A stretch of DNA of 64,000 nucleotides, taken from assembly GCF_964194025.1 (NCBI RefSeq), contig NC_134474.1:55428001-55492000 (forward strand). The letters are read 5' to 3'. The DNA comes from Convolutriloba macropyga (taxonomy: Eukaryota). The translations under genes and the position numbers were made by a program. Below, piece after piece: positions 9,320 to 56,759 of the stretch (position 1 is the stretch's first letter; each line of letters opens with the position of its first letter). The notes under the pieces were generated by a model. That model was not told where the DNA came from. It was given only the letters and a program-made list of their open reading frames with translations, and did no database searches.

Positions 9320-9685
9320 TTATTCAACACTTGCCGAGTTTACGCGCTGTCGCCTTGGGCAAAAACACAGCCTCGTTACATTGATCAAAAAGACAACAAA
9401 CTCCAAAGCTGTCAATGCACTCCACCCAACCCACAGTCCAATATTACCCCCAAAATCAGCCATCAGTGACTGGAAACTGTACGCTTCAAGTTCCGAAATC
9501 CTCTCGAAGTTGAAGTGCTTGAAGTACACCTCGATTCTTACAAAGTTGTTTTTCATGTGTTGTTGAAGTTCGTCCATACTGCTCTGGGTAGCTTTGCTGT
9601 ACTGGGTGAAAATGCTGTTGAACCACCAATGTAAACGATCAGAATCGGACTCTTTGCGTAGGATGTTGATGAGATAGGGTGTGTA
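9320..9685 (-). CDS. DEG/ENaC gene terminal exon (knuckle, beta12, TM2, short C-tail)
   Basis: Acceptor ctatag|TAC, phase 0. Encodes YTPYLINILRK...NFVRIEVYFKHFNFERISELEAYSFQSLMADFGGNIGLWVGWSALTALEF...SASVE*, the typical pre-TM2/TM2 DxGGxxGLWxGxS signature. Confidence 0.93.
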   Translation of the reverse strand, partial: YTPYLINILRKESDSDRLHWWFNSIFTQYSKATQSSMDELQQHMKNNFVRIEVYFKHFNFERISELEAYSFQSLMADFGGNIGLWVGWSALTALEFVVFLINVTRLCFCPRRQRVNSASVE

Positions 9686-10611
9686 CTATAGAGTATACTC
9701 CAATTAATACAGGGATTTGTTTTTTATAATTTTCATAAATTAGTCTAGTAGTGCTAATCAGAATGAAGAAATTTATGCTACTGTATAGCGCTAATCTACT
9801 AATACTATTAACACTATTAGTTTAAATAGTGTTTCATAAATTTCAGTTCAAGTAAGTTTGGTAGAGGAAAACGGGCTCTTTTCCGCTAGCAATTGTCTAA
9901 AAATAAATCAATAAATTGGTATCCTCAACCCTCCCCCACCCAACTAAACTTTACCTTTTCTTGTTTTCAATTTTGGAACAGTCCTTCTTTCCAACCTGCA
10001 ATATATTTAGTACTTAAAGATAAAAATCAAAATTATTCTCCAAGAGCTACAAATTGACGTTTCTTTTTTTCTCAACGATGCGTAAATAAAAAATGAAAAA
10101 ATGACGGAAGAAAAAAACCGTCCCGAATATAAATCCCCACTTCGAAAAATGTTGAAACAAAACCCTATCAAGTCTAGAAAAGATATTTCAAATTTAGATG
10201 AATATCATATATGCAGGTATCATTTGAATTTATTTTTCCTGCTGTTTCAATCGAGGATTGCTCCAAAAAGAAATCACATCTTTTGTTAATAAAGCTAATA
10301 TACTAAAAATAAGCGGCTTACAATTTTAAAATTTTATCTTGAAGTATTTTGGTTTAAACTAAACGCCAATATGTCATTCAATATGTCTTTTCTTAGCATT
10401 AACGTCAAATTAACAAAAAGATCCCTCGGAAGGATCAACAGCGCAAAAAATAGGGTTCGTTCTTTAGATAAATAGGATTGACTGTTTGAATTTCTGTAAT
10501 GAAAATCTTAACCCTATTCTTAATAATAGTCAATTGGTTTTCAGAACCTAAGGACATGTTTCTTGTTCCACACAAACGCACCCCTCATATCTGGCAGGTA
10601 ATCAATAGGCC

Positions 10612-10773
10612 TGTTGACCAACTTGCTTATAAGATCGATTTGACAATAGTAAATTCACAAACTTTGGTTTCAGCGGTAAATTAGCATGGAAACATATGGG
10701 CTAAAGTTAGAAATCAAATCATGCAAAAGTCAAATTAAGAAACTTGCGAAATATTGAAGCTTGAGCTTCAACA
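10612..10773 (-). repeat. 3' LTR of the BEL element
   Basis: tgttgaccaac...gagcttcaaca; matches 19407-19568 at 160/162. Confidence 0.97.
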
Positions 10774-11187
10774 CTCCGCGAGGAGAGGAGGGCGCGCTTT
10801 AAAATTAGGGCTAGACCTGAATACTCTGGTACTAATTTAAAACTAATATAAAACATATTGAGTTTGTGACTTGTAATCTCTTTCGAAGTTGTTGATCTTC
10901 TCTTTGCATTGTAAGCTGCATTGTATGATAGGCAATCTTGTGAGCTGCTGGTTACTTGATTTGGAATGAACCGGTTTGATCTATTTGGCTTCTGATGTTC
11001 TTCTGAGTTGCAATTCGCTATCTCGCGGTGGCTTGACATCTAAAAGCTAATTGGAATTTTTGACAAAATTCACAATCCTCCCACACAACGAGAGAAAAGG
11101 GTTAATAATATTATTGAATGTTGAATGACTGGTTTCCAGGAGATGAGTAAGTAAACAATTTGGTGATAATTTTATTATAGTTTTAAA

Positions 11188-14100
11188 TCAAGTTGGGTTT
11201 GTTGCTGCGCTCTTTGTGATGTCCGCTTCTTCTTCATCTATGACTCGTGACAATTTTACTGCAGGGCGCGTTAGTGTACCTGTTGCTGTGTGAACGTCAA
11301 ATGATCTTGGTATTTCGTCGGCTCCATAATGACATTTGGTTATCCGTACAAGGGGCCAAATACCTCTTGGGGTAAATTCGTTCAGAACCCAGACTAAATC
11401 GACCACTCTGAGTTGTTTTGACTGCTCTCCCCATTTTCGCTGCTTATTAGGCCTGAAGTATACTCTCTTTGAAGTGTTTTCCAGAAGTGGTCCAAAAGCG
11501 TTTGTGTATAGTTGAAATCCCTCTTCCTGAAAGTTTTCAGTTTTGATGTTAGAGGAGCTAGGGCTAGATGTGGTCGTCGAAGAATGAAGTGGTTGGGTGT
11601 CAGGGCTTCTTCGTCGTTGTTATCAGAAGAAACGTAAGTTATGGGGCGGGAGTTTAGGATGCCTTCCGTTTCTGTCAAAATTGTTTTGAAAGTCTCTGCT
11701 TTCAGTTGCTGACTTCCTAAGATTATGAGAAGAGTTCTCTTCGCTGCTTGAATTATTCTTTCCCATATACCTCCGAAGTGTGGAGCAAGTGGTGGATTCA
11801 TTTTCCAAACTATGTTCTGCTGCGATAATTGTTGAGCAATATAGGAGTTGTCAATGCTGATATTATCCAAATTCATAACCTTTTTCGATGCTGTAAAATT
11901 TGTTCCGTTGTCGGAGATTATTATCTCTAGGTATCCTCTCCTTGAAATAAAACGTCTAATTGCAAGTAAACAACTGTCGGTGTCTAGACTATGGCAAACT
12001 TCCAAGTGCACTGCACGGATTACTAAACACGTGAAAATGCAGATGTACTGTTTTTCAAGCTTGCGAGTATTATCCTCAAAGTAGAAAGGTCCAAAGTAAT
12101 CTAATCCTACATTTATGAATGGGTATTGTTTTTCGGCATCAGCAAAGCGAAAGTGCGGAAGATCAGACATCATTGTAATATTCTGAGCTTTCCATCGGCG
12201 GCATATGAAACATGTCCGGCTGAGTCTTCCTAGGAACCTTCGAAGTCCAATGATTAAAAATGTCTGTTGTAGGTGCGCTCTGACAAACTCCGTTCCCATG
12301 TGTTGACAGCTGTTAGTGTGAGCGTCTTGAACAATTAACTGAGTGACATGGTCTTTGATGTCTAGTATTATGGGTTGTTTTTGATTCCAAGGTATTGGCG
12401 CATGTCTCAGCCTTCCTTTGGCACGCAAAACTCCATTTCCGTCCAAAAATGGATTGAATTGAAGAACTGCATCCCTTCGTTACAGTTGTTGTCCAGTTTG
12501 CATTCTAATAATTGCTTTTCTAAAAGTGTTTTGATGTGAAATCGTTATCAGGTAATTTTGGGCTTCATTCTGACTGTTTAGTGTATCACTTTTCCGCAAA
12601 ATGTTTGTTGCTTTGTACACGGTTGTTGTCCTTCTGAGCAATCGTTTCCAAATTGAAAATTTTGATGGTTCTATGACAGGGTCCATACATTTAGGTAATA
12701 CTAAATTTGTCGTTGTTAAAAATTTTGTTTGATCAAAGTTCCAGTTTTCAGGGTCTTGAAGAAGAAATTTTGGTCCATGTAGCCACTTCTCTTCAAACTC
12801 TGATGGTTTCAAACCTCTGGTACCATGGTCGGCAGGGTTGAGCTTTCCGGGTATTTGTTTCCATTCCTCTGCTTTAGAATGTTCCAATATTTTGTTGATA
12901 CGGTTAGCTACGAAAACTTTTTGCCGTTTGTCTGAGTTTATCCATCCTAATGTTGCAGTACTATCCGTCCAGAAGTGAACTGAGGAAAAACTTAATGTCA
13001 TTTCTGTGACTACAAAACTAGCTAGTTCGGCTCCCATTGTGGCTGCCTCTAATTCAAGTTTAGGTATACTTGTGGGCTTTATGGGGGCTACTCGGGATTT
13101 GCTAATGACATAGTTCACAATGACATTCCCTTCAGTAGTTGTAGATCTCATATAAATAACCGCTGAAGTTGCTATATTTGATGCATCTGTGAAGACATGA
13201 AGTTCTGGACTGGTCGTTGGTCCTGTTACAAGGCATCTTTTTGTTGTAATATCTGGCATGCTGTTGAATTCGTTAATCCATTTCTTCAGGTCAATATGAA
13301 ATTCGGCTGGTACTTGTTCGTCCCATTTCTTGCCTTGTTTTATGACTGCTTGAAGAAGGCTTCGAATTCGTATCGCAAATGGCGTTATCGTCCCCAGGGG
13401 GTCGAAAAGCGAAGCTGCTATTGACAAGAGTTCTCTTTGTTGTAAACGTTCAATTTTGATGTCTAAATTGGGTTTCCTAAATATGAAGGTGTCGTTTTTG
13501 ACATCCCACGTCTGTCCCAGAACTCGTTGCGTTAATGCTGTATCTCCTTCAGTGTCGTCAATTAAAGGAAAACTCGAATCGTTGCTGAAGAATTTCGTCA
13601 AGTCCAATCCTCCTTTTTTAAGTATTTCTTTGATGCATGTTGTCTGTTCAATTGCTTCGTTTGTTGTCTCGAAACTCTGTAAAAAGTCGTCCATGTAAAA
13701 CTTATTCGTTATTGATTGACTGGCTTCAGGTGATAAGTGGTGATTATCAATGGCACATTTTCGAAGTACATAGATAGCACAAGAGGGCGAACAGGTTGCA
13801 CCAAATATGAGTCGCTTGTATTTGTATATTGTTTCGGTGTTGTTTTTGTACCATAGAAACCTTAATGCGTCTTGATCTTCTTTCCTTACTGCTATCTGCA
13901 TAAACATGGCTTCTATATCTCCGGCAACTGCTATGGAAAACTGTCGAAAGCGTAGTAGGAGTCCAACTAAACTGCAGAGAAGATCTGGTCCAGTTAGAAG
14001 CGCTTTATTCAGTGAAAGTCCTTTATAAATAGATGCTGCGTTTGTTACACGACGAATCTTTTTCTTCTGTTTGTGCTGTACTGGATGATGAGGAAGATAC

Positions 14101-17100
14101 CATAATTGGCTGCAAGTTGGTGAAGGTTCGCGGTCCGTCTCCTCAATGTAACCTTTTACAATATCGTTCTGAATTAAGCTGCTGTAGGTGTCGGCTAACT
14201 GTTTGTCTTCATTGAGGCGCTTTTCCAATGATCGTAATTGGGCTTTTGCTAGAAAGTAATTGTTAGAAAATTGTATGTTTTGTTTCCAGGGTAGTCCAAT
14301 CTCATACCTCTCTCCGTTATGTTTTACTGTATCCTCGAAAATTTGTAGGGCTTTCTTGTCTTCTTGGTTTACTGTATTAGGTGAAGCCTTTGTTGTTCTT
14401 GTTCCTTCACAGGTCCGAAATAATTGTAGCATGTCTTCGTCCAAAATTGTCTCTTCTGACTTAACCCTATTGAACAAGGTTATATTACGATTGCATTGGT
14501 TCTTCTCTGTAATTTGTCTATACTTCTTTGGGACTGGTCCTGTTATTGTCCATTCTAATTGTGTGAGAACTCCGTACGGTGTTCCCGGTGGTCCGATTGT
14601 GTACTTGAGTGGAACTGTTGCTGTAAAAGCATCGGCTCCTATCAGAATACCTATTTTGTTGTCTCTGATTTGAGAAAAATTGATATCGCTTAAATGACCG
14701 AAGTCCTTACAAACGCTGTTGAGCATCTGAATTGGCACCGTCGGCATTAAGTCTGTGGTAGCAGTCGCAAAGACTGGTAAGTTAATGATAGGTCTACTGC
14801 TGTCGATGGCTCCAATCCCAAGAAAAATTTCTGTTGTTTCAATCGTGTGTTCTTGGTATAGTGATGCTACGGGTATTGTAACACATTTCCTATCACGAAT
14901 TCCTAAAGCATCTGCTATTGTCTTGGTAATTTGCGTATTGTCACTTCCACTGTCAAGGAGAGCGTAAGTTTCAATGGAGACCGTCTCCGAAAACACTGTT
15001 ACCGGTATTGCTTGGAGCTGAAAATGTGGTCGGATCCAACTGCTCAGCTGGTTATTACTGCAAGTGCAGTTCTGGTGTCGGTTATTGCTGCCTGAGAAGC
15101 TTTGCGAATTTTGGTCTGTTGAGTGCTGATATTGTTGATTAAAGTTTCCTGATGTTGGCTGCTGTTGTTGAACATTGGGCGTATTGGGCACTTGATGTGA
15201 TTGCCCGTAATAGAAGTTCCGGTTATGTCTGTTGTAGCTGTTACTATTGTTGTAGTTACCATTTGTGCTATTGTTGCTGTTGCTGTTGATGCTGCTGTTG
15301 CTGTTGTAGTTGTTGTTGTTGCTGCTGTTGTATCGGCTTCTGCTGCGTTGCCGGTTGTAACCACTGTTACCATTTTGTCTAGTTTGGTGATTGCAGTTGG
15401 GGTTACTGCTGCTCAAATTTTTGTTCCACGAAGAACTGTTGTTTGTGAAATTGAACTGGTTTCTGTACAAGTTATCTGCATTGTGTCGATATTCAGATGT
15501 TGATTGGTTTTGTCCTTGATTACTAGGCTGTGTTGTGTTGAAATTGTTACGGTGTATTGTTGAGTGATGAAAACCGTTACAATTGTCTACCTGGCATCTG
15601 TATTTGCTGTTGCATTGTCCTTTTGGATGTTCAGTAAGACAATTTGGGCATAAGTGCAGTTGTCGCACTGTCTGCTGTCTGTCGTACACGTTTTCACTCA
15701 AAAATTTTTGACATTTTCCTAAATTGTGGCTTTGTGAACAAAGCGGGCAATTCTTTCTGGCGTTGATCCTTTGTTCAGATTTTCCACGTTGGTGTGTTCT
15801 CTCATAGAATGAATTTCTGTTGTGAGTGCGTGGCATATCTTCGCACGCTTCGGCATACTTGTCTATCCAATCTTTGAAAGGAATCAAATTTGGGTTAACA
15901 AGTTCTTTGCGGATGACATTTTCGTTCCACTTTATTATCATTGCAGGAGGTAGTTTTTCTTTGGCTACTCTGAGAACGGCGGATGATTGCAGGTCCGGCG
16001 TAAACTCGTGAAGAAGAAAAGTTTGTACTAATTGTCTGAGAAACGCTGCAAATGAAATGAAGCTGTCTGGGTTGTCTGTCGAAGGCTTGGGCCAGCGTTC
16101 CAGTTTTTCAAGATATGCTGCAATAACAGTTTGTGGTCTTCCAAATCTTCTCTTGAGTTCAGTTATTACATCGTGGTAAAATTCTCCATTATATGAGTAT
16201 CCAAAAACGCTTTCCTTTGCGCGATCTGTGAGAGCGTTTTGGAGATAGGTGATTTTCCGTGCGTCCGAAAGAGACACGTTATCATGTATTGTTGATTTGA
16301 AATAACAATACCACTCGTGCCATTTGAGGGGGTCTCCGTTGTATGTCTTCAGTTGTGTCTTTGGCAAATTGATATTATGTACGGGTTTCTCTGATTTGGT
16401 GTAAATTGCAGATTGCGAAAATGTTCGTTGGTTGAATTGGTTGTGTGATATTCATGTAGTTGTGTAGCAGATTCGCAGTGAACTGTGGGTTGTCTGACAT
16501 TGGAGCTGTCCTCGTATCTCTCCATACTGTTCTCTCTGATTTCGTGTATTGCATGAGACTCGCTGCGGCAAGACCTTGTCTGTATTTCCGTGTCAGATGT
16601 GTCTGCTGATACTGTTGGACGGCTGTAGGTTGTCTGTGTTAACATGGTATTCTCATTGCAACGAGGTTGATTCCGATTCTCGGGTGAGAAAATGTTTCTA
16701 TCCCTTGTTTGTTTTTGTTTATTCGAAGCAAGAGTTCGTGAATTTGTTAGGCAACTTTCCTGTTGTGTTGATTGTTGGTGAGTTGTGCTTCCCACAATAA
16801 ATTGTAGTTTGGATGCTTGGTTCTTTGAGGAAACTTTTGCACGCGAATCGTTTCGTTGGTTTGTCTCTTCATCGCTGTCACTGTCACTGTCGTCACAGCT
16901 GTCCTCTGAGGGACAATTGCTAATACCTTTTTGTGCTATGAGCAGTTTTGAATTTCTGAGTTGTTTATCTGGAAGCTGATGGCTTTTAAATATTGCTGAG
17001 TGATTTACTATTGATGTTGTTTGGGGGTCCTGATTGTTTTTGTTGGGTTTCACAAACTGAAATGGTTCGGCAAATTGATTATGCCAATTTGTTCCAATGC

Positions 17101-18003
17101 ACTCGTTATGTTGATTGCTCTGGGTTCCCTTGGAAAGTTCAGGTTGTCGTTCGTTTCCTTCGTTTGAATCTTTAGGTTCACTATTGGAGGTCTGTTCAAC
17201 AAATGTTTGAGAAGACCCCTGTTGTAAACTGTTCCGCTCCCAATCTATTCGTTGATTACTAATTCCTATGCTGTTGTTTGCTGTGTTTTCTACAGTTTCT
17301 CCAATGATACGTTTGCAGGATTTATTCGACACAACTGTATCTCTGCCGTTTTTTCGATGACTGTCAGGCGAAGAATTGTCAGTGTCATTTCGAAAATTCA
17401 GTGATTGATATCTATCAATGCTGAGTGCGATTTCATTTGAGACAGAACAACTGGTATTGTTTCTTTCGGTCAGTGTCGGGCATGAGTCTTGTGGCTGTGA
17501 TATAGAGATGCGCAGACTTCTATCTGATGATGATTCTCTCGAGTTGTTAGATGAATTATGTCTTTTCGTAAGTTGTACCTCTGTGTGATTTTGGGCTGCA
17601 TTTTCTTTGTGCCTGGTGTATCTGTTTGATATAATTTCGATGAAGGCGCATACATTGTTGTTTTTGTAATAGGATTGCCTCCTGAAGCACCAACTGTGTT
17701 CATCTTTGATCTAGACAAACCATTTATAATTTTCTTCCATTTCAGCAATGTTGTTGTGCGTTCACCTGAGCGTTCGGCAACTGTGATGTTCTCGTTAGTT
17801 GTAAGGGTAAACTCGGAGATATTATCCAATAGCTTGTCCAAGCATGCCTTATGTTCCAGCAGTGTGTCATACGTGAGTTGAAGAACGTCAACGTCATCGG
17901 TCTGATACTGTTCCTCAAGAAAGTTAACTGCTGAGCCCCACTCAACTTCACGTCTCATTTGTTGGATCAACGTCTCTTTCCTTTTATTTGTTTTTGGTGC
18001 CAT
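11188..18003 (-). pseudogene. BEL/Pao gag-pol polyprotein, disrupted (about 3 frameshifts and 1 in-frame stop)
   Basis: DUF1759-like PKTQLKTYNGDPLKWHEW; triple knuckle CPLCSQSHNLGKC / CPNCLTEHPKGQC / CQVDNCNGFHHSTIH; protease ALLDSGSD; RT YMDD; RNase H LHVFTDAS...PKLELEA; integrase H-H-C-C, GLDYFGP, SDNGTNF, GGIWER. In-frame TAA at 12480-12482 and frame changes near ~17500, ~16370 and ~11440. Confidence 0.95.
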
Positions 18004-19393
18004 TTGTTTCGGTCTAATTGCTGTTTGGAATTGTTCGGGTTATTCTTGCTTAGTGCTTAATTAGTTTGCAGTTTTGAACAATTTCAGTTTCTATGCAAAT
18101 TTAAACAGCACTATCAATGAGAAACCCTGTATTGTTGCGCGCAAGAGTATTCAGTGTTACTTGAGGTTGGTAAAGAAGCTGCTCTTTCTACTTCCGTTGT
18201 CTGTTTTTTAACTAGTATTCTCCAATCTGTATGCAGTCTAATGGTTGTGAGTTCTTTTAATTGTCAGCCTATTTGCTGATAAACGATTATTTTTACTTTT
18301 TTCGAAAGAAAATTCCTTTGTTATGGTGATATGTTAAAAGAGCAAAATTTATCTCAGAGCCGAGTGTGCTTTTATATTGTTGTGATATTAGTGAAGGTAT
18401 GGTCTGAGTTTCTTTTATCCTAAACTTGGTTGGGTCTGTTGGACTTTGCAGATGGTCAGAGAACGTCAATTTTTTTAAGGAAAATTATTGTCAAAAGAAA
18501 TTATTTTTTGCCGACTTTTGATACGTGGGGTTACTACTTGACGTTTAAATCTTCTCTGCAACGAACAACCTAAATCCGAAGCTTTGTCTACTGTTTAACG
18601 TGCCCTCTGAAGTAGAAAGTGTTTGACTGTAATTGCCGTGTTCTTTCTTGCTTTACATTTTGAAGAGATTGAAAATTCCAAAACTTCGATATCTATCTAC
18701 GATAAAAAACAAATTTTATTGTGTTGTTATTTTCTTTATGTGTGTGTATATGATTGAACACTATCTACTTCAAAGCAAAGAACGATGTACACGCATCTAC
18801 AGCTATTAAACTGCTTTCTAAAAAAAGGAGGTGGTTTTTTTTGCAATAAGTTGTGATGCTGTTTAGGCCTTTTTGCACAATAAAACTTTTTCAATGATAA
18901 CAAAGACGCGTGGACAAAGTCTTTTTGTTTATAAATATGATATTAGGTATATAAATATATATATAGGTAAAATAGGCTTATATAGATATAGGTTACTTCT
19001 GATTGAGACCCTTTTACTTTTGTTACTTAGTTCTTTGTTAGAAAGATAGAACTATAAAAAATTAGTTGCTGGCAAACAATGCTTTACTTTCATATTCCGA
19101 AACTATTTTCCTTCTCTTTTGGAATTTGTATTTGATTATGCTATTTCTGTATTTTTTCTGTTCTCCTTCTTTTTTGTAAGTTTTGAATTTTTCCTCTCTC
19201 TTTTTTCGTATTCGTTGGCGGGCTGTAGTTGCAGTTCTAAATTGTTCTAAAATAAAGAAAACATTGAGTTATGTGAATACAGATATTCGGTATTGAAAAG
19301 AATTCAAAGGTACTCCCTGTCTTTACGTCAATTTTTTTTTAAGGTCTACAATTTTAATTTTATCTCAGATGTTTTTAATTGCAGTTCGTTGTT

Positions 19394-19405
19394 TCGGGGT
19401 CCCCA
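19394..19405 (-). other. Primer-binding site, tRNA-Trp-like
   Basis: TGGGGACCCCGA lies 1 nt inside the 5' LTR and matches TGGTGACCCCGA (complement of the tRNA-Trp 3' end) at 11/12. Confidence 0.7.
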
Positions 19406-19406
19406 A

Positions 19407-19568
19407 TGTTGACCAACTTGCTTATAAGATCGATTTGACAATAGTAAATTCACAAACTTTGGTTTCAGCGGTAAATTAGCATGGAAACATAAGCGCTAAA
19501 GTTAGAAATCAAATCATGCAAAAGTCAAATTAAGAAACTTGCGAAATATTGAAGCTTGAGCTTCAACA
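19407..19568 (-). repeat. 5' LTR of the BEL element
   Basis: Matches 10612-10773; adjacent to the PBS internally and the TSD externally. Confidence 0.97.
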
Positions 19569-22916: not shown

Positions 22917-23113
22917 CTGAATAGTGGGCCATCCAGACTCGGACACTGAAGTCTGGTAATCTTCACTGCGACACTCGGGCGCACATGGACACTCGACAGA
23001 TGGGTCTCCCGCATTGACCAGTTTGTGAACTTCACTCACACACTCCCTCTCCTCCCTGTCCCACCCCTGACAGATCTTGTTAGTAGTCGTGTCGTTGCCA
23101 TCGTAAAAGTCAC
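22917..23113 (-). CDS. DEG/ENaC gene exon (Cys-rich thumb to WP motif); absent from the ORF track
   Basis: Acceptor ttatcag|GT, phase 1. Hand translation gives (G)DFYDGNDTTTNKICQGWDREERECVSEVHKLVNAGDPSVECPCAPECRSEDYQTSVSESGWPTIQ, the CxCxxxC...Y...S...WP thumb signature. Followed by ggatct (non-GT donor). Confidence 0.92.
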
Positions 23114-23707: not shown

Positions 23708-23869
23708 GGATCTTTTCCGTTTGTGCCCCCCCAGCTTAGTGGGCGCATATTATTTGCACCCCTCAGATGCACGTGCAATATTTTTTACATAATGACTTAA
23801 TATGTAATGGCACGTGCTCTGTAACTGGGGGGCGCATAACGTACTGGGGGGCACAAACGAAGAACATCC
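23708..23869. mobile_element. 162-bp MITE with GG termini and 8-bp TSD (Merlin-like)
   Basis: TIRs ggatcttttccgtttgtgccccc / gggggcacaaacgaagaacatcc; TSD caaaatta at 23700-23707 and 23870-23877. Confidence 0.85.
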
Positions 23870-27934: not shown

Positions 27935-28202
27935 CAATGAAATTATCCACACAGTGACATCGATCCCACAACAGCGTCTGTAGACAAAACAGATCACACA
28001 CTCTTGAACTGTAAGGCCATTGCTGTCTGATCTCATCCGGAATGTCCAGCTCATCTGGGAATTCGTTCACGCAAGGTCCAAATCTTCCCCCAAGCCGTTC
28101 AACAATTTCTTTCCGGATGGCAATTTTGGCAACAGTTCCTGATGATACAGTTATACCATAGGCTTCTGGGATTGGGTACTGGTCCATTGGGTCTATGACA
28201 AC
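27935..28202 (-). CDS. DEG/ENaC gene exon (palm/beta-ball to start of thumb)
   Basis: ttctag|GTT ... ATT G|gtaagt, phase 0 to 1. VVIDPMDQYPIPEAYGITVSSG...ERLGGRFGPC...YSSRVCDLFCLQTLLWDRCHC. Confidence 0.93.
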
Positions 28203-28720: not shown

Positions 28721-28978
28721 CTGTGCCCCTCCATCATGAGCGAGAGACCCCACATAGTTATCGAAGTCTAGAAACAGAGTCACTTTCAACCCATACTGCT
28801 GGCCAGTCCTGGACGATGTCCGGATCCTCTCGAAATCTCCAGTGATATTGTCTCTATCTTTGTTCAAGATGGAGTTGAACGTGAAACAATTGCCGTACTT
28901 TGGGTTCTGGAACTTCTCAAAGTCTCCCGACTTACAGAGGCGACCATCGAACGTACATTGGACCACGAAGTCTTCGTA
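28721..28978 (-). CDS. DEG/ENaC gene exon (GNCFTFN region)
   Basis: tttcag|TAC ... CAG|gtttga, phase 0 to 0. YEDFVVQCTFDGRLC...YGNCFTFNS...GQQYGLKVTL, the ASC-family signature. Confidence 0.95.
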
Positions 28979-29374: not shown

Positions 29375-29561
29375 CTGCGTTCCAAAATGGTTCAGCTCAA
29401 ACTCATTGAAGGTTGCAAATCGTTCAAAGTCACTGTAGTCTGGCATTCTGGCTAGTTCATACACAGCTACCCAGTCATAGGGTTCAATGGGTACGTTAAA
29501 TGACTTGAAGGGATCCCAGTTCCAATAGTAAACATCGTAATTGTTCCAATACCACTCCTCA
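29375..29561 (-). CDS. DEG/ENaC gene exon (finger domain)
   Basis: attag|T GAG ... ACG CAG|gtaagc, phase 2 to 0. EEWYWNNYDVYYWNWDPF...PDYSDFERFATFNEFELNHFGTQ leads into the conserved G-x-Q...F-x-x-x-C-x-F-x-G motif. Confidence 0.85.
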
Positions 29562-30664: not shown

Positions 30665-30688
30665 AAGTACTCGGTGGGCCAGTAATCA
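30665..30688 (-). CDS. 24-nt microexon of the channel gene
   Basis: tgtttcag|TGATTACTGGCCCACCGAGTACTT|gtaagt, phase 2 to 2; reads (Y)DYWPTEY(F). Confidence 0.7.
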
Positions 30689-30763: not shown

Positions 30764-30788
30764 TATCCTTTTGACCTCCAGGACGGCT
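30764..30788 (-). CDS. 25-nt microexon of the channel gene
   Basis: tctttttag|AGCCGTCCTGGAGGTCAAAAGGATA|gtgagt, phase 1 to 2; reads (E)PSWRSKG(Y). Confidence 0.7.
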
Positions 30789-34490: not shown

Positions 34491-34540
34491 ATTGGCGCAA
34501 AAACAAATTAAGCTCTTAACTTCTATTGTTAGCTCAATTA

Positions 34541-35542: not shown

Positions 35543-35589
35543 GAATTATTCCAACCTTAATGTGATAGGAGAATAAGAAAACACGCTAA

Positions 35590-46186: not shown

Positions 46187-49100
46187 CGGTTGTTGTTGTC
46201 GGAGTGCTAGTAGTGACATCACCAGTTCTACGAACTCTTCTACTGTACATTTTTCTATTTTGCATAACGCGTTCTCGGTCAACCTGCCTTTTCATTTTCC
46301 TCCTTTCGGCTCTTCTTTCAGATTCCTTCAAGTAGTTATGATACAAAACTTCTAACTTCTGATCAGCTGTGAGTGTATTTGAATGTCGTTTCAACCTAGG
46401 GACCACATCTCCTACCAGAGGCTGGGTTATCCTAGAAGTGGTTGCAGAAGTCTCGGTTTCCTCATCAATTGGTATTGAAATCGGCATCAAAAGTGGCGAT
46501 TCGGAACTCGTACTCTCAGAAGTTGAGACCCCATTAGAAGTCGTATTCGCCAACAACGTAGAAGTGGTAACCGATGAATTGGTACGTGAGGCAGTATTCC
46601 CTGGGACTGTCAAAGTAGCGTTCAATGTAGTAGTAGGTCCTGTTGATGTTGTACTAAATGTATTAGACAGCACTGTCGAAGTTGTGTTAAATGTAGTAGT
46701 TGGTAGTGTCGACGTTGTATTAAATGTGGTAGTAGGTACTGTCGAAGTTGTATTAAATAGAGTATTAGGTACTGTCGAAGTTGTATTAAATAGAGTATTA
46801 GGTACTGTCGAAGTTGTATTAAATGCAGCAGTCGGCACATTCGATGTCGTACTAAAGGTAGTAAGGACTGTCGAAGTTGTGTTAAATGTTGTAGAAGTAG
46901 GCACTGTCGATGTTGTATTAAATGTGGTATTAGGTACAGTCCAAGTTGTATTAAATAAAGTAGAGAGTACTGTCGATGTATTTGATGTAGAGGTGGGCAC
47001 TGTCGATGTTGTAGTAAATGTAGTAGACACTGTGGAAGTTGTGTTAAATGTAGTAGTAGGAACAGTCGAGGTTGTATTAAATATAGTAGAAAGTACCGTC
47101 GACGTTGTATTAAAAGTAGAAAAGGGTACTGTCGATGTTGTATTAGACGAAGTAGTTGGTCCTGTCGAAGAAGTCTGAAATGAAGTAGGTACAGTGGAAG
47201 CTGTGCTAAATGTGGTAGTAGGTACTGTCGATGTTGTACTAAATGTAGTAGTTGGTACAATCGATGTTATATTAAATGCAGTAGTGGGTCTTTTCGATGT
47301 TGTATTAGTTATAGTAGAGAATGTCGAAGTTGTGTTAAATGTTGTAGTACTAGTAGGTAGTGTCGATGTTGTATTAAAATTGGTAGTAGGTACCGTCGAG
47401 GATGTATTAAATTTAGTAGTAGGTACTGTCGAAGTTGTATTAATTGTAGTAGTAGTAGTAGTAGTAGGTACTTTCGATGTTGTATTAAATGCAGTAGCAG
47501 GTACTGTCGAAGTTGTATTAAATGTAGTAGTAGGTACTGTCGAAGTTGTATTAAATGTAGTAGTAGGTACTGTCGAAGTTGTATTAAATGTAGTAGAAGG
47601 TAAAGTCAAAGTTGTATTAAATGTAGTAGTAGGTACTGTCGAAGTTGTATTAAATGTAGTAGTAGGTACTGTCGAAATTGTACTAAATGTAGTAGTAGGT
47701 ACTGTCGAAGTTGTATTAAATGTAGTAGTAGGTACTGTCGAAGTTGTATTAAATGTAGTAGTAGGTACTGTCGATGTTGTATTAAATGCAGTAGTAGGTA
47801 CTGTCGAAGTTGTATTAAATTTAGTAGTAGGTACTGTCGAAGTTGTGTTAATTGTAGTAGTAGTCGCTGTCGAAGTTGTATTAAATGTAGTAGTAGGTAC
47901 TGTCGAAGTATTAAATAGAAAAGTAGGTTCTGTCGAAATTGTGTTAATTGTAGTAGAAGGTACTGTCGAAGTTGTGTTAACTGTAGTAGTAGGCGCTGTC
48001 GAAGTTGTATTAATTGCAGTAGTAGGTACTGTCGAAGTTGTATTAAATTTAGTAGTAGGTACTGTCGATGTTGTATTAAATGCAGTAGTAGGTACTGTCG
48101 AAGTTGTATTAAATTTAGTAGTAGGTACTGTCGAAGTTGTGTTAATTGTAGTAGTAGTCGCTGTCGAAGTTGTATTAAATGTAGTAGTAGGTACTGTCGA
48201 AGTATTAAATAGAAAAGTAGGTTCTGTCGAAATTGTGTTAATTGTAGTAGAAGGTACTGTCGAACTTGTGTTAATTGTAGTAGTAGGTACTGTCGAAGTT
48301 GTGTTAACTGTAGTAGTAGGCGCTGTCGAAGTTGTATTAATTGCAGTAGTAGGTACTGTCGAAGTTGTATTATATGTAGTAGTAGGTACTGTCGAAGTTG
48401 TATTAAATGTAATAGTAGGTACTGTCGAAGTTGTATTAATTGTAGTAGTAGGTACTGTCAAAGTTGTGTCAATTGTTGTAGTAGTAGGTGCTGTCGAAGT
48501 TGTGTTTATTGTAGTATTAGGCAGTGTCGCAGTTGTGTTTATTGTTGTAGTAGTAGGTGCTGTCGAAGTTGTGTTTTTTGTAGTAGTAGGTACTGTCGAA
48601 GTTGTGTTTATTGTAGTGGTAGGAGGTGCTGTCGAAGTTGTGTTAATTGTAGTTGCAGGATCTGTCGAAGTTGTATTAATGGCAGTTGTAAGAACCGTTG
48701 TAGTCGCATCCGTTGTTGAGAAAGCGCTAAAATTTGTCGCTGTGCCTGAAATGGATGAGCTTGAGCTCGAGGGCTGTGGATATGATGTTGAAACAGATGT
48801 TAGAACAGTGGACGTGGTAGTCGAACTTGATGAGCTCGAGGTTGAGATTGAAGTTGTTCTGGTGGTTGAAGTAGTCGTTGGTTGCGCCTCAGTAGGAACC
48901 CAAGTTCCGGAACCCTGTAGAGGGTACTGCAAATACGAAATGTTAAAGCCGAGCTTGCGGACTGAGAAATCAGTTACAAATTGGACTGTCAACATATTGG
49001 AAGGTGACCGAACGATCAACGATCGGTCGGATGAACCAACAAGTGATGTTGTTATTATTCCACACACTCGATCTTCGCCCTCGAACTGAAGAACAGAATC

Positions 49101-49213
49101 GTCCGTTCCGTCAAGAAAAAGCAAATAATCGATGCAATCTTTCCGTTCACCAACTGTATTTGCGAATTGAATATCCAAAAGTGGATTGATAATTATTGCA
49201 ACGCCTTTGCTGT
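46187..49213 (-). CDS. 3027-nt exon: CUB C-terminal half, Thr/Ser mucin stalk and polybasic furin-site segment
   Basis: Acceptor tttttag|AC (phase 1) and donor ACC G|gttaga (phase 1), so the ORF-track stop at 46182 lies in the intron. CUB motifs C-x-DYL...DG...CG...S-x-SNMLTVQFVTDFSVRKLGFNISY. Confidence 0.88.
46600..48680 (-). repeat. Coding 33-bp VNTR (11-aa unit NTTSTVPTTTF), roughly 60 units
   Basis: Plus-strand unit aatgtagtagtaggtactgtcgaagttgtatta, with frame-preserving variants only. Confidence 0.95.
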
Positions 49214-49762: not shown

Positions 49763-49898
49763 CATTTTGAGACTGAATATTCCATTCGCAATCGAGTCCA
49801 TTCTCATACAGTGTTCTGTTCTCATATCCAACTGAGGTGAAGAACTGCTCCCCATCTAAGGCTGTCAACGTCCATGAACAATTTTTAACACAGTTGAA
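49763..49898 (-). CDS. Exon: last LDLa Cys and CUB N-terminal half
   Basis: gttttag|TTC ... AAT G|gttggg, phase 0 to 1. FNCVKNCSWTLTALDGEQFFTSVGYENRTLYENGLDCEWNIQSQN matches the CUB F-x-S-x-x-Y...Y-x-N-x-x-x-C-x-W-x-I pattern. Confidence 0.9.
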
Positions 49899-51370: not shown

Positions 51371-51869
51371 AACATAGCTGGCAGATTGCCAGAAAATAGC
51401 CGCAATAGATTCGTAGATCGGCAGTCTAAAAACAACATTAAAAAAGACAGACCAAAAAAATTCGTCTTTTCATTGAAGGCTGATCTGTTATATTTTGATT
51501 AAAAATCTGTATAAGTTATTGCTGCCTCTATTAGCTGATCTCAAATAACCTTCATTTAGAGTGACACACACCCATTTGACCTTATCTCTTTGAATTAAAG
51601 TAAATAAAAGTCAATTTTAAAGTGAGGAAGTCATTTTTGAGAGTGAGGTAAGTCAAGTGTGACCAAAAATTTAATCACGCGCATGAACAAAAAAACTCGC
51701 TCCACTAAGAGCGAAAAATGACGTCACACATGCAATTCAGTTGAAATTGCATGAACGAATGAAAAAAAAGTGGCTGTGACGTCATATGGTCGTAACAAAA
51801 ATCATGACGACGAAATAAAAAAACCAAGAGAAGGCCAATAATAGCCCCAGCTATCGCTGTGCGGCTATT
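51371..51869 (-). mobile_element. Helentron/DINE-1-like element, family 1 (~500 bp)
   Basis: aacatagct-GGCAgatTGCC-agaaAATAGCCGC ... GCGGCTATT. The last ~50 bp also occur alone at ~45529-45576. Confidence 0.65.
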
Positions 51870-53906
51870 AATAACAAAAATTTCAAACAATTTTTTAAAA
51901 CCTTCAGTCACATCAACAATAAGCTTTCCACAAACAAATAGTGAAGAGATTAATTTTATGATTACGACGCCAATGAGAGATGTCATTAGTGAGACAAGGC
52001 TTTAAAAAAATTAACGAAAACAGGCACAGCTGAACTTTTGATCTTTTAAGAATTAGGTTTTGATTAGAAGTCAATCTGGTCCGTAATTAACACGCAAAAA
52101 AGGCAAATTATATTTTTAAAAAAGACGACACCTCCCATTAAAATCTGTCTTATTTTTTAAAACAAATTTAAAATCCACAGGTAGAACAAAGTTGTTTGTC
52201 CATTGAAATAAATTGTCCATTTATTGCCGAAATAGATAACTTAAGGAAATATCAAAATTAAAAGATAGATTAGCAAAAAACAAGTAAGTTTTCTCTGCAA
52301 ATAATAGATAGTTTAACTAACAACTCCTTAAAGCGAAATCATCCTGTCATCAACTAAACGCGGTCATAAAACTACAAAAAAGAACAACGAATACTGGAAA
52401 AACTCAAGAGTTCGTTAAAAAATTTAAGAAAACACTTTCTCGAAGCCATAAAAACCATGCACATTACTCAAAAGGCAAAACATCTATTCGATGGTTCTCA
52501 ATCGAACAAAAACGTGACCTCCCATTAATTGAACTCCTAAACGAAAACAGACTCGTCTGTTAATGCGGTGGTAAAAATGCAGAAAAAAAATTTAATAAAG
52601 ACATACCCAAAGCACAATCCGGAAGGCCGCAAGAATTTGAGTTTCAGAACACTTTCTTAGGAGCCGGAGGTAAAAATAGCCCTCATATAAGTAATCACAG
52701 ATTGTTTCAGCAGTTTTCAGGTCTGCACTACCGGACCACTTTGACAAAGTGGGCTAAATAAGCGTATTTGGTGCCACTTTTCATGGAAAAAAGAGGAAAA
52801 ATTTTTGAACTTTAACAAAAAAAAGACGGTTCAAACAATTTAAAAACTTACTTTGGATCAGTACAAAGAAAAATAAAGAGACTATCAATAACAATTTTAG
52901 CATTTTTTGTGCAAAATTGGTCAGAATCTCGGCAAAAATCACGAATAAAACAACAAAAGTGAGGCTAACAATCACAAATCTTCAATCCTTCGTAGCTCCT
53001 CGGAAAAGCAAAAATCAGTACCAATCTTTTGGATTTCATATTCTACGCTTGACGAGCTTTCTAATGATGCCACTCACAACTCTGTACGATGAATATATCG
53101 ATCGGTTAGCATGTAGTTCCCCCACTAAAGTGAATCGGAACACAAACAGCATTCATAGCTTTGATGAAAACCACAAACTACAAATTCAAGGGCATCGAAT
53201 AAGCTGGAATGCTTGAAAATGCAACGCAACTAATTGTTCAAATAACATCTAGAAGGCCAGCAGTGTATGTCGATTTCGCGACCCCGTGCAAATGTCACCC
53301 CCCCCCCCCCCACCCTCCAATCGTTTTCTTGATCACTCATTCTTTATTTTCTGCACCCTGGCACAATAAGTTCAGTCAGAATCCAGCCAGCTCCAAGTCA
53401 TAAATCCGAAAGGATTGAGAACTCTTAACCGCCACGTATAGTCTCTTAACCGCCACTGTTCTAACAGCTAGACATGTATGGCGCATGCTAGATGTATCCT
53501 GGACGACCTAACATCGTGCGTTGAACGTAAAAACGCCCTGCTGCATAATCATATTTCCGGTTTCCGCCCTCGCACGCTTTTTGTTAGACTAGTCCCATTT
53601 TTGCTTTTTGGAACTGTTTTCAGAGTAACATGCGTTACCACCAACATAAATGACCTCATACTGGAGCCACTAGTTTTGCACATCATTCTCCCCTGCAGTT
53701 GTTATGGATACAGCTTGCAACTGTGAAGTGAAAGTAGGGAATTCTTCCTTTACTCTGTCCAAAATAGAACTACAAACGACCGACGTAATCAAATAATGAG
53801 AATTTAAATTGCGACAGCTTTGTCTAGGAGACTTGCATTACAAGTTCAATGGGTGAAGACAAAATGCAAGAATGCCTTTTATTAAATTGTCTAACTAGTC
53901 ACTCAC

Positions 53907-54082
53907 TGGAGGACCCTTTGACTCGTCAATCCCGTCTAGACACTCTACAACCCCATCACAAGGCAGAGCACAAATGGGGTCAGCGTCCCCACACTCTATA
54001 TACCCATCCAGACAGTCCCCTGCAAACTCGACCCACTCATCCGGCTCCTGATCAGTCCAGTATGTGGAACAGTTGATTGCAG
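53907..54082 (-). CDS. Exon encoding an LDL-receptor class A-like repeat
   Basis: cggcag|CT ... CCA|gtgagt, phase 1 to 0. (T)AINCSTYWTDQEPDEWVEFAGDCLDGYIECGDADPICALPCDGVVECLDGIDESKGPP (CDGxxxCxDGxDE). Confidence 0.9.
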
Positions 54083-54649
54083 CTGCCGAAACGCATCACC
54101 ACGTATATTCAAAATGAACCTTAAGCGTGAATGAAACATGAAACAGCTTTAATGATGAAATAAATATTGGACAAAATTTTATTAGTATATTTGACCACTG
54201 AGAAAATTATTAGTCAAATTATTATATCAGTCAAAAGGATGAGAAAAATTTGTATCAATTCGATATTCGCATCACGCTCACTCCAAACCCATGATAAAAA
54301 CTAAATAGTTAATTGTAGTACAAAAATCTGGGGTGGACAAAACCATTCTAGAAAAATAAACCCTCATCATTGCTTCTGGCTTCATTGTGCACTGTGGTTG
54401 GATTCCGACATTCGGAAACAGTTAAAAAGTACTCCATGACATTTTACGTTATGAATCAGATCTATTACATTAAATGTAAGTCGCACTTGAGCGTAATGAG
54501 TAGCATTGCTCCTATCTTCACATGTTTTAACAATCCTTAAACGTCAGCCTACACCAACATGGTTAAGCTCCTGATCTGCACATGTTCTTGTGCTCATTAA
54601 GCATGCAGCAAAAACCAGCGAGACAAAAAAAGCCATTGATCAAAAATTT

Positions 54650-56075
54650 GCGTATGTAGTCAGTTCAAAACAGTCAGAAGCAACAGGCGTCGGTAGCGTA
54701 CGGCATTAGACATATACAACTATTTTGAATCCTTTCAACTTTTTTCAGACCATATATAACACTAACTAAACCTGCATTATGCTATTCGGTTTTTAACGTC
54801 ACTTCCGTCTCGTACGTCGTCACTTGAAATCTGATTTTTTGTTCGTTTATTCATGCAATTTAGACTCAACTGCATGTCTGACGTTATTTTTCACTCCTCC
54901 CGTCGAAGAGGGGTTTTGTTCTCTTGTATTTATTTCTGCTTAATTTAATAGAAGCAGATAAGTTCAACAACGCATTCCACCCTCTTTAAAGATTATTCAA
55001 TTAAAATGTTAATTTCTGTCAATCTGCCAACTATTTCATGTTTTTGTTTCCCTAATTTTGCTGTCGATTCCCTTTATCTCTAAACTACTCGCTTGGAAAC
55101 AAAACGAGCAAATAGCTCTTAAAAATTGTTAAATGATTAATCCATCAATATGTCAACAGCATTTTTTACTGTCCTTTCTCTTTAAAAATTGGTTCTTTGT
55201 AATGTGTCAAATTTAAATCTACCTATAAAAGACAGATCAGGCCAACTTCTCTGCCCCTGTCCTGCGAGTCTGACTACCCATAGTACAAATTAGTTAAACC
55301 AAAAGCAGTCTTGAATTATGAAAAATGAAATGGACATTATATGCTCAAAATGATCAATGTTAATAATAAAGCATTGCGACCACATTAAAATAACGAAATT
55401 GTTCTTTTTAGAAACAACTGTTTAACTTGAAAACGTTTTAGTCATTAAAAATGTTGGCAACTGCATCATTTTGATTTTGTATCTGTTGCTATCTATAGTA
55501 TGAATCACGTAAGTCTGTTTCGCAAGCAGCTATTTAGGTAAAATTCGTGCGTATGTGGTCAGTTCAATAGGCACAGGGAACAGGCGTCGGTAGCGTAAGG
55601 GATTAGACCTATACAATTTCAACCTTTTCAACTATTTTCAGACCATGTATAATACTGACTAAATCTGCATTATGCTATTTGGTTTTTAACGTCACTTCCG
55701 TCTCGTACGTCGTCACTTCAAATCTGACTTTTTGTTCTTCTATTCAAGCAATTTAGACTGAACTGCATGTCTGACGTTATTTTTCACTCTCATTAGAGCG
55801 AGTTTATTATGGTTGAATTGTATGGCTCATTTAATGGTCACTATGACTCATCTCACGCTCAACAGGGCTTTTGATCTCTCGTATCGATTCTTGCTCAATT
55901 TAATTGACAGAGAGATGTTCAACTACGCATTCCACCCTTTTTGAAGATTATTCACCTACAATGTTAATTTGTGGCGATCTGCCAGCTGTTTCATATTTTT
56001 GCTTCCCTATTTTTGTTGTCGATTCCCTTCATCTCCAAACTACTCGTTTGGAAACAATACGAGCAACCAGGTCTG
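54650..56075 (+). repeat. Direct duplication (~54650-55120 vs ~55550-56075) made of family-1 element remnants
   Basis: caggcgtcggtagcgta and aacgtcacttccgtctcgtacgtcgtcactt occur in both copies. Each carries the (g)gcaatctgccagct-type hairpin end on the plus strand. Confidence 0.8.
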
Positions 56076-56665
56076 CAAAACTGTTATAATCCATTATGTT
56101 TACTGTCTTTTGATCGAAAAAACGGTGTATGGGCAAAAAATTGCTTTCTCGCTAGTGTTTTTTATATTCAGATGCGATGTTTTCGTTTTGATTTGTATTG
56201 TTTTTCCGAATTCTTTTTTGCTGGAATTTTTTCTAAACGGTTTTGCCCAATCAAGAAATAGTATATTCTATGTCTCGTCAATGTTAAATATACAATTGGT
56301 TAAAGATCAGTTTGATGTTAACAGCTTAAGTTAACACACATTAACGTAATCACTGTCTAGCATATTTTCCGAAATAAAATTAAAACCCAGTGATTAGAGG
56401 ATTCGAATATTTGCACGAATCCTTCATTGTGTTTAAAAATTCAAAAATCATGCAAAATCTTTCCAGTTGATTCAAAATTTAGCAAAAAGCAGGCATTCTA
56501 TTAAAAGTTTGTTTGCAAGCTTCTCGTAAGATTTCCATTATTCTATTGGATTACTGATGGTTCCTACAACATTCCGTCGAGAGTTCGATCTTATGCTAAG
56601 CGAAAAAACCATCAATAATATGCGAGCATTTATAATTAACAAGATCAAGTTGACTATATTCTTAC

Positions 56666-56759
56666 TGAAGTTATCATACTCCGATGGTAGTCCTCCCTCA
56701 TCCCAACAGTCTTCACACTCGCATGTCCCATCACACAACCACAACTCCGAAACACACTC
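56666..56759 (-). CDS. Exon encoding an LDLa-like repeat (C-terminal half)
   Basis: gtctag|GAG ... TTC A|gtaaga, phase 0 to 1. ECVSELWLCDGTCECEDCWDEGGLPSEYDNF. Confidence 0.85.

What the first reader, a model, noticed from the sequence alone, without database searches (positions are those of the whole stretch)
9320..56759. Giant chimeric DEG/ENaC channel carrying LDLa-LDLa-CUB and a mucin stalk inside its extracellular finger region
Seen: the LDLa/CUB/mucin exons and the ENaC exons lie on the same strand in a splicable order. The mucin ORF ends at a phase-1 GT donor (ACC G|gttaga, 46187), and the first ENaC microexon starts in phase 1 (ag|AG, 30788). The 11 exons total 4758 nt with no internal stop; the junction reads ...TPTTTT-E-PSWRSKGYDYWPTEYFEEW.... 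I found no HG-motif/TM1/FPAVTxCN exon in 30790-46186, which is almost all transposon DNA. Known: DEG/ENaC subunits are typically ~500-800 aa with a variable finger domain; CUB+LDLa proteins (Neto1/2, SOL-2, LEV-10) are separate auxiliary or clustering partners of ligand-gated channels; C. elegans EGAS proteins are a precedent for adhesion modules (EGF) fused to ASC domains. Inference: a >1585-aa channel subunit with a built-in binding head on a glycosylated tether, possibly a tethered mechano- or mucus/chemo-sensor.
Basis: partly seen in the sequence, partly recalled or inferred. Interest (0 to 1): 0.92.

Follow-up and report, generated by a model that had tools for sequence, protein, structure and literature searches.

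The report
Sodium channel gene with built-in mucin
This stretch holds most of one gene for a sodium-channel subunit whose outer part carries two LDL-receptor modules, a CUB module and an 810-residue sugar-bearing mucin tract; relatives in other animals share the modules but not the mucin, and nobody has shown yet that this copy is expressed.

Summary
Eleven minus-strand exons (56759 to 9320) join with matching phases into 4758 nt (1585 codons) without an internal stop. The reading as one gene is supported. The model is collinear, from the middle of LDLa1 to the C-terminus, with six public relatives built ASC(N)-LDLa-LDLa-like-CUB-dibasic site-ASC(C). Three of the four I looked up are single uninterrupted ORFs in genomic contigs, so the architecture needs no splicing assumption. 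One cluster includes Symsagittifera roscoffensis XP_063722317.1.

New here is an 813-aa Thr/Ser-rich tract (62 copies of a 33-nt repeat). It lies in the same exon as the CUB end, upstream of the family's conserved furin-type site.

Caveats:
- The roughly 160 N-terminal residues (TM1) are not in the window.
- Intron 10 starts with GG, confirmed in DNA contigs.
- No RNA run was listed.
- The "head on a tether" picture is topologically wrong, because the mucin follows the head.

Mapped on human gamma-ENaC, the cassette sits where the protease-regulated finger/GRIP region lies. The scan had already noted mucin-less paralogs on other pieces of this genome. I found no paper describing the family.

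The parts
56666..56759 (-). Exon with the second half of LDLa module 1 (ECVSELWLCDG...WDEGG). It starts mid-domain, so further 5' exons must exist.
   Evidence: Pfam Ldl_recept_a positions 14-34. tblastn with P0005 residues 161-187. Splice sites read.
53907..54082 (-). Exon with the last Cys of LDLa1 and a second, LDLa-like six-Cys module.
   Evidence: tblastn with P0005 residues 187-235, E 8e-7. The Pfam LDLa match is weak. Aligned with the family.
49763..49898 (-). CUB domain, first part.
   Evidence: Pfam CUB positions 6-36. Phases checked.
46187..49213 (-). One 3027-nt exon holding the CUB second part (to about 48921), the Thr/Ser-rich mucin tract (about 48935-46497) and a basic linker with two furin-type sites.
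   Evidence: Pfam CUB positions 54-110. ORF listing. Gene model.
46606..48680 (-). Tandem array of 62 copies of a 33-nt (11-aa) unit, roughly TTSTVPTTTFN. Over the whole tract: T 44%, S 14%, 58 N-X-S/T sequons.
   Evidence: Tandem Repeats Finder. Composition count.
46386..46397 (-). RLKR, the first R-X-K/R-R site. It aligns with the dibasic site that follows the CUB domain in all six relatives.
46227..46238 (-). RVRR, the second R-X-K/R-R site, which closes a 53-aa tract.
30764..30788 (-). Microexon 1 (25 nt, ..EPSWRSKG.), with strong acceptor and donor sites.
30665..30688 (-). Microexon 2 (24 nt, .DYWPTEY.). The GYDY motif resembles P0005 NGYDYGYDY.
29375..29561 (-). Finger-end exon (EEWYWNNYD...DYSDF...).
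   Evidence: tblastn with P0005 residues 447-496, 55% identity. 63% identity to paralog locus L002.
28721..28978 (-). ASC exon with GNCFTFN.
   Evidence: Pfam ASC positions 146-216. 62% identity to P0005.
27935..28202 (-). ASC exon (palm/thumb).
   Evidence: Pfam ASC positions 231-321.
22917..23113 (-). ASC exon ending ...SESGWPTIQ, followed by the non-canonical donor GG at 22916-22915.
   Evidence: Pfam ASC positions 331-381. Sequence read. The GG is present in DNA contigs of runs X2 and X4 with no differing letters.
9320..9685 (-). Last exon: pre-TM2, TM2 (9448-9377, with G-W-S at 9427-9419), a short tail and the stop codon.
   Evidence: Pfam ASC positions 390-455, E 3e-17..
10612..19568 (-). 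BEL/Pao LTR retrotransposon inside intron 10, not part of the gene product. Its terminal repeats are 99% identical.
   Evidence: the repeat finder family D2. Pfam Peptidase_A17, RVT_1 and rve.

Best explanation
The window holds the 3' nine-tenths of one DEG/ENaC channel-subunit gene. It belongs to an undescribed subfamily in which the variable finger region carries LDLa, an LDLa-like module, CUB, a furin-type cleavage site and a disordered linker.

In this copy a 33-nt repeat has expanded, inside the CUB-containing exon, into an 813-residue Thr/Ser/Asn-rich mucin tract. The tract lies between the CUB domain and the conserved cleavage site. The exons for the N-terminus, TM1 and the first LDLa half lie upstream of the window.

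Inferred mechanism. The subunit folds like other DEG/ENaC subunits. Its finger displays a calcium-type binding cassette (LDLa/CUB). Furin-type proteases cut after RLKR and RVRR, as they do in the ENaC GRIP domain. That would release a 53-residue tract and split the subunit into two chains that stay associated. The heavily glycosylated mucin would then be a free C-terminal brush on the N-terminal chain. The cuts, and/or ligand binding to the cassette, would set channel activity.

Shown here: the gene structure, its homology to the relatives, the domain order and the presence of the sites. Inferred only: cleavage, glycosylation, ligand binding, channel function and expression.
For: - The 11 exons have matching phases and form a 4758-nt open frame.
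- The model is collinear with six relatives. All 26 conserved extracellular Cys are kept. Identity to P0005 is 50% in the ASC C-part, 44% in the LDLa region and 26% in CUB.
- The relatives have the same architecture by Pfam. P0021, P0118 and P0041 are uninterrupted genomic ORFs. P0005 is an uninterrupted ORF on a 3048-nt contig.
- All six relatives have a dibasic site directly after CUB, and ours aligns there with RLKR. A second site, RVRR, lies 53 aa downstream.
- The P0005 cassette maps between gamma-ENaC residues 113 and 253, which is the finger/GRIP region.
- In the AlphaFold model of P0005 the ASC core and CUB are confident and the linker 379-439 is disordered. The fold matches FaNaC, ASIC and ENaC.
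- The mucin array was measured.
- TM2 keeps the G-x-S motif.
- Evidence that the GG-AG intron is used: relative to paralog L002, 17 nt coding WPT(I/L)Q now sit at the end of exon 10 and stay intact. The ancestral copy in front of the TM2 exon has decayed (TGG CCT became GAG TAT, CAA became TAG). The reading frame therefore appears to have been kept across this intron.
Against: - No RNA run was listed, and the four runs laid are DNA. No junction is confirmed, including 46187 to 30788.
- The intron 10 donor is GG, and a sense-strand LTR retrotransposon lies in that intron.
- The donor after the mucin exon is weak (GTTAGA). An in-frame TAG follows immediately, and an AATAAA lies 90 nt downstream.
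- TM1 and the HG motif were not seen, because they lie outside the window.
- The linker homology to P0005 is not significant on its own (BLASTP E 0.79).
- The cassette has no detectable sequence similarity to the ENaC GRIP domain.
Confidence: 0.7

Rival explanations
1. The locus is a decaying copy (pseudogene) of such a channel gene. The GG donor and the retrotransposon in intron 10 prevent joining of the TM2 exon, so no functional channel is made.
For: - The donor is CAG|GG, and it is real in DNA contigs.
- Read-through reaches a TAA after three codons.
- A young, same-strand BEL/Pao element lies in that intron.
- Introns are very large and no expression data exist.
- Paralog L002 uses only canonical sites.
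Against: - All 11 exons are open.
- All 26 conserved extracellular Cys and the TM2 motif are kept.
- The relocated WPTIQ codons are intact while the old copy has decayed, which argues for selection across this intron.
- Other first-stage notes report GG, GA and GC donors in otherwise clean genes of this genome. Those notes are unchecked leads.
Confidence: 0.2
2. There are two independent genes: a secreted or membrane LDLa-LDLa-CUB mucin ending at the TAG at 46182-46184, and a separate ENaC gene downstream.
For: An in-frame stop lies right after the weak donor, and an AATAAA sits at 46092. No junction reads are available.
Against: - No TM1 or N-terminal ASC exon lies between the two parts, or anywhere in the window, so the ENaC part alone would lack its first 160 or so residues.
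- Relatives carry both parts in one ORF in the same order.
- The microexons supply the required phase.
Confidence: 0.05
3. The same gene mainly gives a short isoform by polyadenylation in intron 4. That product would be a TM1-anchored LDLa-LDLa-CUB mucin without the pore half, with the full channel a minor product. This does not exclude the best explanation.
For: The GTTAGA donor is weak, a stop follows immediately, an AATAAA lies 90 nt downstream and the intron is 15.4 kb long.
Against: GTT-type donors also occur at two other introns of this gene whose exons are clearly joined by homology. AATAAA is common in DNA of this base composition, which is 35% G+C.
Confidence: 0.1

Closest known systems
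Uncharacterised DEG/ENaC proteins with an LDLa-CUB cassette: P0005 (JGI sample 3300035580), P0021, P0041, P0136, P0141, and P0118, whose cluster holds Symsagittifera roscoffensis XP_063722317.1
   Same: Same order of parts: TM1, finger helix, LDLa, LDLa-like module, CUB, dibasic site, linker, DYSDF motif, ASC core, TM2. Identity in the ASC C-part is 29-50% and the Cys pattern is the same.
   Different: Their linker between CUB and the core is at most about 110 residues with no mucin; here 813 Thr/Ser-rich residues are inserted. The relatives I looked up are intronless ORFs; this gene has at least 10 introns.
Vertebrate ENaC alpha and gamma subunits (finger/GRIP domain, activated by furin and other proteases)
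   Same: Same fold family. The cassette and the tract flanked by two R-X-K/R-R sites lie at the same place in the chain as ENaC's finger/GRIP region.
   Different: No sequence similarity to the GRIP domain itself. ENaC has no LDLa, CUB or mucin modules. Cleavage is not shown here.
Ptychodera flava uncharacterised protein P0157 (1312 aa), and P0109, P0091, P0062 and P0120
   Same: These are DEG/ENaC proteins with extra extracellular modules inserted before the ASC C-part: 7 LDLa plus 3 CUB in P0157, and LDLa arrays, Kringle, PAN or F5/8-C modules in the others.
   Different: They differ in the number and kind of modules and have no mucin array. Identity to P0005 is 24% (P0157).
Neto1/2, SOL-2 and LEV-10 (CUB/LDLa auxiliary subunits of ligand-gated channels)
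   Same: CUB and LDLa modules positioned beside an ion channel's ectodomain. The P0005 CUB matches Neto2 at E 1e-14.
   Different: Those are separate single-pass proteins that partner glutamate or acetylcholine receptors. Here the modules are part of the channel chain. The CUB is closer to PCPE-1, cubilin and neuropilin (E 1e-27 to 1e-17).
C. elegans EGAS proteins (EGF modules fused to an ASC domain)
   Same: A precedent for adhesion-type modules fused to a DEG/ENaC core.
   Different: They carry a different module type.

Membership tests
DEG/ENaC (Pfam ASC, PF00858) | Sequence match to the ASC profile across the ectodomain and TM2 | tested here: met
   Four exons match profile positions 146-455, with E-values from 1e-4 to 3e-17. 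Identity to P0005 over 390 columns is 50%.
DEG/ENaC (Pfam ASC, PF00858) | N-terminal HG motif, TM1 and the post-TM1 FPAVTxCN strand | tested here: inconclusive
   Not found anywhere in the window by tblastn or family HMMs. Because the LDLa1 exon starts mid-domain, 5' exons are expected beyond 64000.
DEG/ENaC (Pfam ASC, PF00858) | Conserved ectodomain cysteines and the G/S-x-S motif in TM2 | tested here: met
   All 26 conserved extracellular Cys columns are kept. G-W-S lies at 9427-9419.
DEG/ENaC (Pfam ASC, PF00858) | Forms an amiloride-sensitive cation channel | not testable with these tools
   Needs expression and electrophysiology.
LDLa-CUB finger-cassette subfamily (P0005, P0021, XP_063722317.1 and similar) | Order ASC(N)-LDLa-LDLa-like-CUB-dibasic site-linker-ASC(C) | tested here: met
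   Alignment from LDLa1 to the C-terminus and Pfam on the relatives. The ASC(N) part was not seen in the window.
ENaC-type proteolytic regulation (GRIP domain) | Two furin-type sites flanking a tract in the finger | tested here: met
   RLKR at model residues 1075-1078 and RVRR at 1128-1131, 53 residues apart. The position maps to gamma-ENaC 113-253 via P0005.
ENaC-type proteolytic regulation (GRIP domain) | Sequence or fold homology to the GRIP domain | tested here: not met
   P0005 residues 118-497 do not align to ENaC chains. Only the flanking parts do.
ENaC-type proteolytic regulation (GRIP domain) | Cleavage changes open probability | not testable with these tools
   Needs biochemistry and electrophysiology.
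Mucin domain | Long tandem repeats rich in Thr, Ser and Pro | tested here: met
   62 copies of a 33-nt unit. The tract is 813 aa with T 44%, S 14% and P 7.5%.
Mucin domain | Dense O-glycosylation | not testable with these tools
   Needs protein chemistry. 58 N-X-S/T sequons were counted.
Neto/SOL-2/LEV-10 auxiliary subunits | A separate single-pass CUB/LDLa protein that binds a channel | tested here: not met
   The modules lie within the channel's own reading frame.

The most novel reading that the evidence does not exclude
Acoel-type worms, and possibly other marine invertebrates, have a DEG/ENaC subfamily in which the protease-sensing finger region is replaced by a calcium-type LDLa-LDLa-CUB receptor cassette plus a cleavable tract. 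In this copy an 810-residue mucin brush is part of the channel subunit itself. If expressed, it would be an ion channel with an intrinsic mucin domain, gated or tuned by ligand capture, by proteolysis, or by coupling to the mucus layer.
Probability: 0.45. Interest if true: 0.75.

Novelty: new variant of a known kind. Interest (0 to 1): 0.6.

Why it matters
DEG/ENaC channels are gated by very different stimuli: protons, peptides, force and proteases. The finger is the part that differs most between them and that receives these stimuli. A subfamily with a ready-made binding cassette and furin-type sites at that position would be a natural experiment on how new gating inputs are wired into this fold, and it can be tested directly in oocytes. 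The mucin-bearing copy would add a channel that is physically part of the glycocalyx. I found no paper describing the family, although predicted proteins are in public databases.

Tried and rejected
- RNA evidence: two run searches listed no RNA run. The four runs I laid are genomic DNA, with even depth over introns, and show no splice joints.
- A protein search with the CUB half of the mucin ORF found nothing.
- The ESM Atlas look-up of P0005 gave only generic ASC clusters.
- A phage DNA search was irrelevant and found no match.
- A candidate exon for the first LDLa1 half at 60999-60942 (..AKCGQKINYCTFNVTG) is not accepted. Its strong donor is in phase 1 against the phase-0 acceptor at 56759, and the family HMM does not pick it up.
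- I tested whether the two ends of the GG intron pair with each other, as other notes on this genome report for such introns. The pairing is not above shuffled controls (dG -8.7, z -0.06).
- I looked for homologues of the microexons upstream in paralog locus L002 and found none within 7.5 kb.
- BLASTP of the basic linker against the P0005 linker is not significant (E 0.79). The match rests on position in the family alignment only.
Full report
**What is in the sequence.** On the minus strand, Pfam finds ASC (amiloride-sensitive sodium channel) matches in four exons. Together they cover profile positions 146-455. Upstream there are weaker LDLa matches (56759, 54095) and CUB matches (49898, 49241). 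The second CUB part runs, within one open frame of 1019 codons, into a Thr-rich tract.

I rebuilt the exon model from the DNA. It has eleven exons, totals 4758 nt and 1585 codons, and has no internal stop. Every junction has matching phases. Nine of the ten introns are GT-AG. Three of these have GTT-type donors (gttggg, gttaga, gtttga). Intron 10 begins with GG (CAG|GGATCT, 22916-22915).

Between exon 4 and exon 7 there are only five strong donors on this strand. Only two of them have a pyrimidine-tract acceptor 12-60 nt upstream, and these are the two proposed microexons. They lie 75 nt apart, and their summed length of 49 nt gives the phase that exon 7 requires.

**One gene or two.** A full-library HMMER search with the TM2 exon returned several long relatives.
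- P0005 (848 aa), P0021 (860), P0041 (857), P0136 (750), P0118 (778) and P0141 (880) all have the Pfam order ASC(N part), LDLa, CUB, ASC(C part).
- tblastn of P0005 on the window is collinear: LDLa1 161-187, LDLa2 187-235, CUB 305-364, ASC 447-836.
- A MAFFT alignment of the model (mucin removed) with the six relatives is collinear from the third Cys of LDLa1 to the C-terminus.
- All 26 conserved extracellular Cys are kept.
- Identity to P0005 is 44% in the LDLa region, 26% in CUB and 50% in the ASC C-part.

P0021, P0118 and P0041 are single uninterrupted ORFs in genomic contigs (L003 3001-5583, L004 1001-3337, L005 1001-3574). P0005 is an uninterrupted ORF on a 3048-nt contig. The architecture therefore exists elsewhere without any splicing assumption.

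The P0118 cluster contains Symsagittifera roscoffensis XP_063722317.1. The same assembly (ERZ25878734) holds L002, a paralog or ortholog with 58-78% amino-acid identity to the exons here. I infer from this that the animal is probably an acoel-type worm. A Ptychodera flava protein carries 7 LDLa and 3 CUB modules in the same place.

The two-gene reading also fails on another point. No exon for TM1 or FPAVTxCN exists between the two halves, or anywhere in the window. In addition, the exon at 56759 starts in the middle of an LDLa module. The gene's first 160 or so residues must therefore lie upstream of 64000.

**What is special here.** All six relatives have a dibasic or furin-type site directly after the CUB domain (REKR, PKRS, RKRR, VKRS, SKRS, RKRR). 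In this gene an 813-residue tract lies between CUB and the aligned site RLKR (46397-46386).
- The tract is 44% Thr, 14% Ser, 8% Asn and 7.5% Pro.
- It is built of 62 copies of a 33-nt unit with 78% matches.
- It has 58 N-X-S/T sequons.
- A second R-X-K/R-R site, RVRR (46238-46227), closes a 53-residue tract.
- Some other DEG/ENaC proteins among the hits have short Thr runs in this region, but none has anything of this size.

**Where the cassette sits.** P0005 residues 45-117 align to human gamma-ENaC 44-113, and residues 498-832 align to 253-553. The cassette and linker therefore occupy the finger/GRIP region. In ENaC, two protease cuts in this region release an inhibitory tract; that is established knowledge, see for example the abstract of PMC13488063 listed.

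An AlphaFold model of P0005, built with a 40-sequence alignment, has mean pLDDT 75.8. The ASC core and the CUB domain are confident. Residues 176-243 and the linker 379-439 fall below 50, as expected for an exposed, cleavable stretch. Foldseek matches FaNaC, ASIC and ENaC chains with TM-scores (by target length) of 0.48-0.70.

**Topology.** The LDLa-LDLa-CUB head is joined directly to the N-terminal, TM1-side half. The mucin comes after the head and before the cleavage site. Uncut, it is a giant loop. Cut at RLKR, it becomes a free C-terminal brush on the N-terminal chain.

**The GG donor.** The GG is present in contigs of DNA runs X2 and X4 with no differing letters, so it is not an assembly slip.

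L002 has a canonical intron 17 nt further upstream..GAGTCAG|gtctga ... tttag|TGTGGCCTACTCTACAA TACACA. In the window, the stretch in front of the TM2 exon is still alignable to the L002 intron end and exon start. However, the old acceptor is lost (TTTAG became TTAAT), the WP codons have decayed (TGG CCT became GAG TAT), and CAA has become the TAG that now serves as acceptor. An intact GA TGG CCC ACT ATT CAG (WPTIQ) sits at the end of exon 10.

The intron has therefore shifted by 17 nt with the protein sequence preserved. I read this as indirect evidence that the frame has been maintained across this intron, and hence that the GG-AG intron is removed. First-stage notes on other pieces of this genome report GG, GA and GC donors in otherwise clean genes. 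They are unchecked. The end-pairing they describe is not above chance in this intron.

A young BEL/Pao element (10612-19568, terminal repeats 99% identical) lies in the same intron on the same strand.

**What is missing.** No RNA run was listed, so no junction is confirmed. The donor after the mucin exon is weak. It is followed at once by an in-frame TAG, and an AATAAA lies at 46092. A short, channel-less isoform therefore cannot be excluded.

**Literature.** Four full-text searches found no paper that describes DEG/ENaC proteins with LDLa and CUB modules.

**Earlier work in this scan.** The scan had already noted paralogs with an LDLa-LDLa-CUB cassette on other pieces of this genome, and one of them was followed up. 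Only this window carries the mucin.

**Verdict.** The single-gene chimeric architecture is well supported by homology. The mucin insertion is a new variant within an undescribed subfamily. Expression, splicing at two unusual donors, cleavage and function remain open.

Noticed in passing
window 9686-9715 and 22917-22933; L002 9210-9900: Intron 10 has shifted by 17 nt relative to paralog L002. The WPT(I/L)Q codons now lie upstream of the intron, and a decayed copy remains in front of the TM2 exon. The new intron is GG-AG.
   Followed up: partly
window 10612-19568 (minus strand): A BEL/Pao LTR retrotransposon with gag-like, protease, RT and integrase ORFs. Its terminal repeats (10612-10773 and 19407-19568) are 99% identical, so the insertion is young. 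It lies in sense orientation inside intron 10.
   Followed up: partly
window 23500-26100: A very high-copy repeat in intron 9. Summed contig depth is 10^4-10^6, against about 30-60 in the flanks, in four DNA runs, with many internal joints.
   Followed up: no
window 9721-10238 and 20287-20803: Two direct copies (80-92% identical) of a dispersed element of about 520 nt inside intron 10. One copy lies 35 nt from the acceptor.
   Followed up: no
window 27843-27999: DNA runs X2, X3 and X4 each hold a second 386-nt contig with 14 differences over 157 nt. A copy about 91% identical to this exon region (an allele or a close paralog) therefore exists in the same animals.
   Followed up: no
L003, L004, L005 versus the window: Relatives P0021, P0118 and P0041 are intronless ORFs, whereas this gene has at least 10 introns and L002 has several. 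Three of the donors here are GTT-type. This suggests intron gain in this branch of the family.
   Followed up: partly
window 63231-63578 (minus strand): An ORF with weak C2H2 zinc-finger matches (Pfam zf-H2C2_5, E 2e-4). It lies upstream of the LDLa1 exon, probably inside an intron of the channel gene.
   Followed up: no
window 46092: An AATAAA lies 90 nt downstream of the in-frame TAG that follows the weak donor of the mucin exon. This is a possible site for a truncated isoform.
   Followed up: no
window 45388-45624 and 51705-51986: The same ORF fragment (..NSRTAIAGAIIGLLLVF..) occurs twice, pointing to a dispersed repeat in introns 4 and 2.
   Followed up: no
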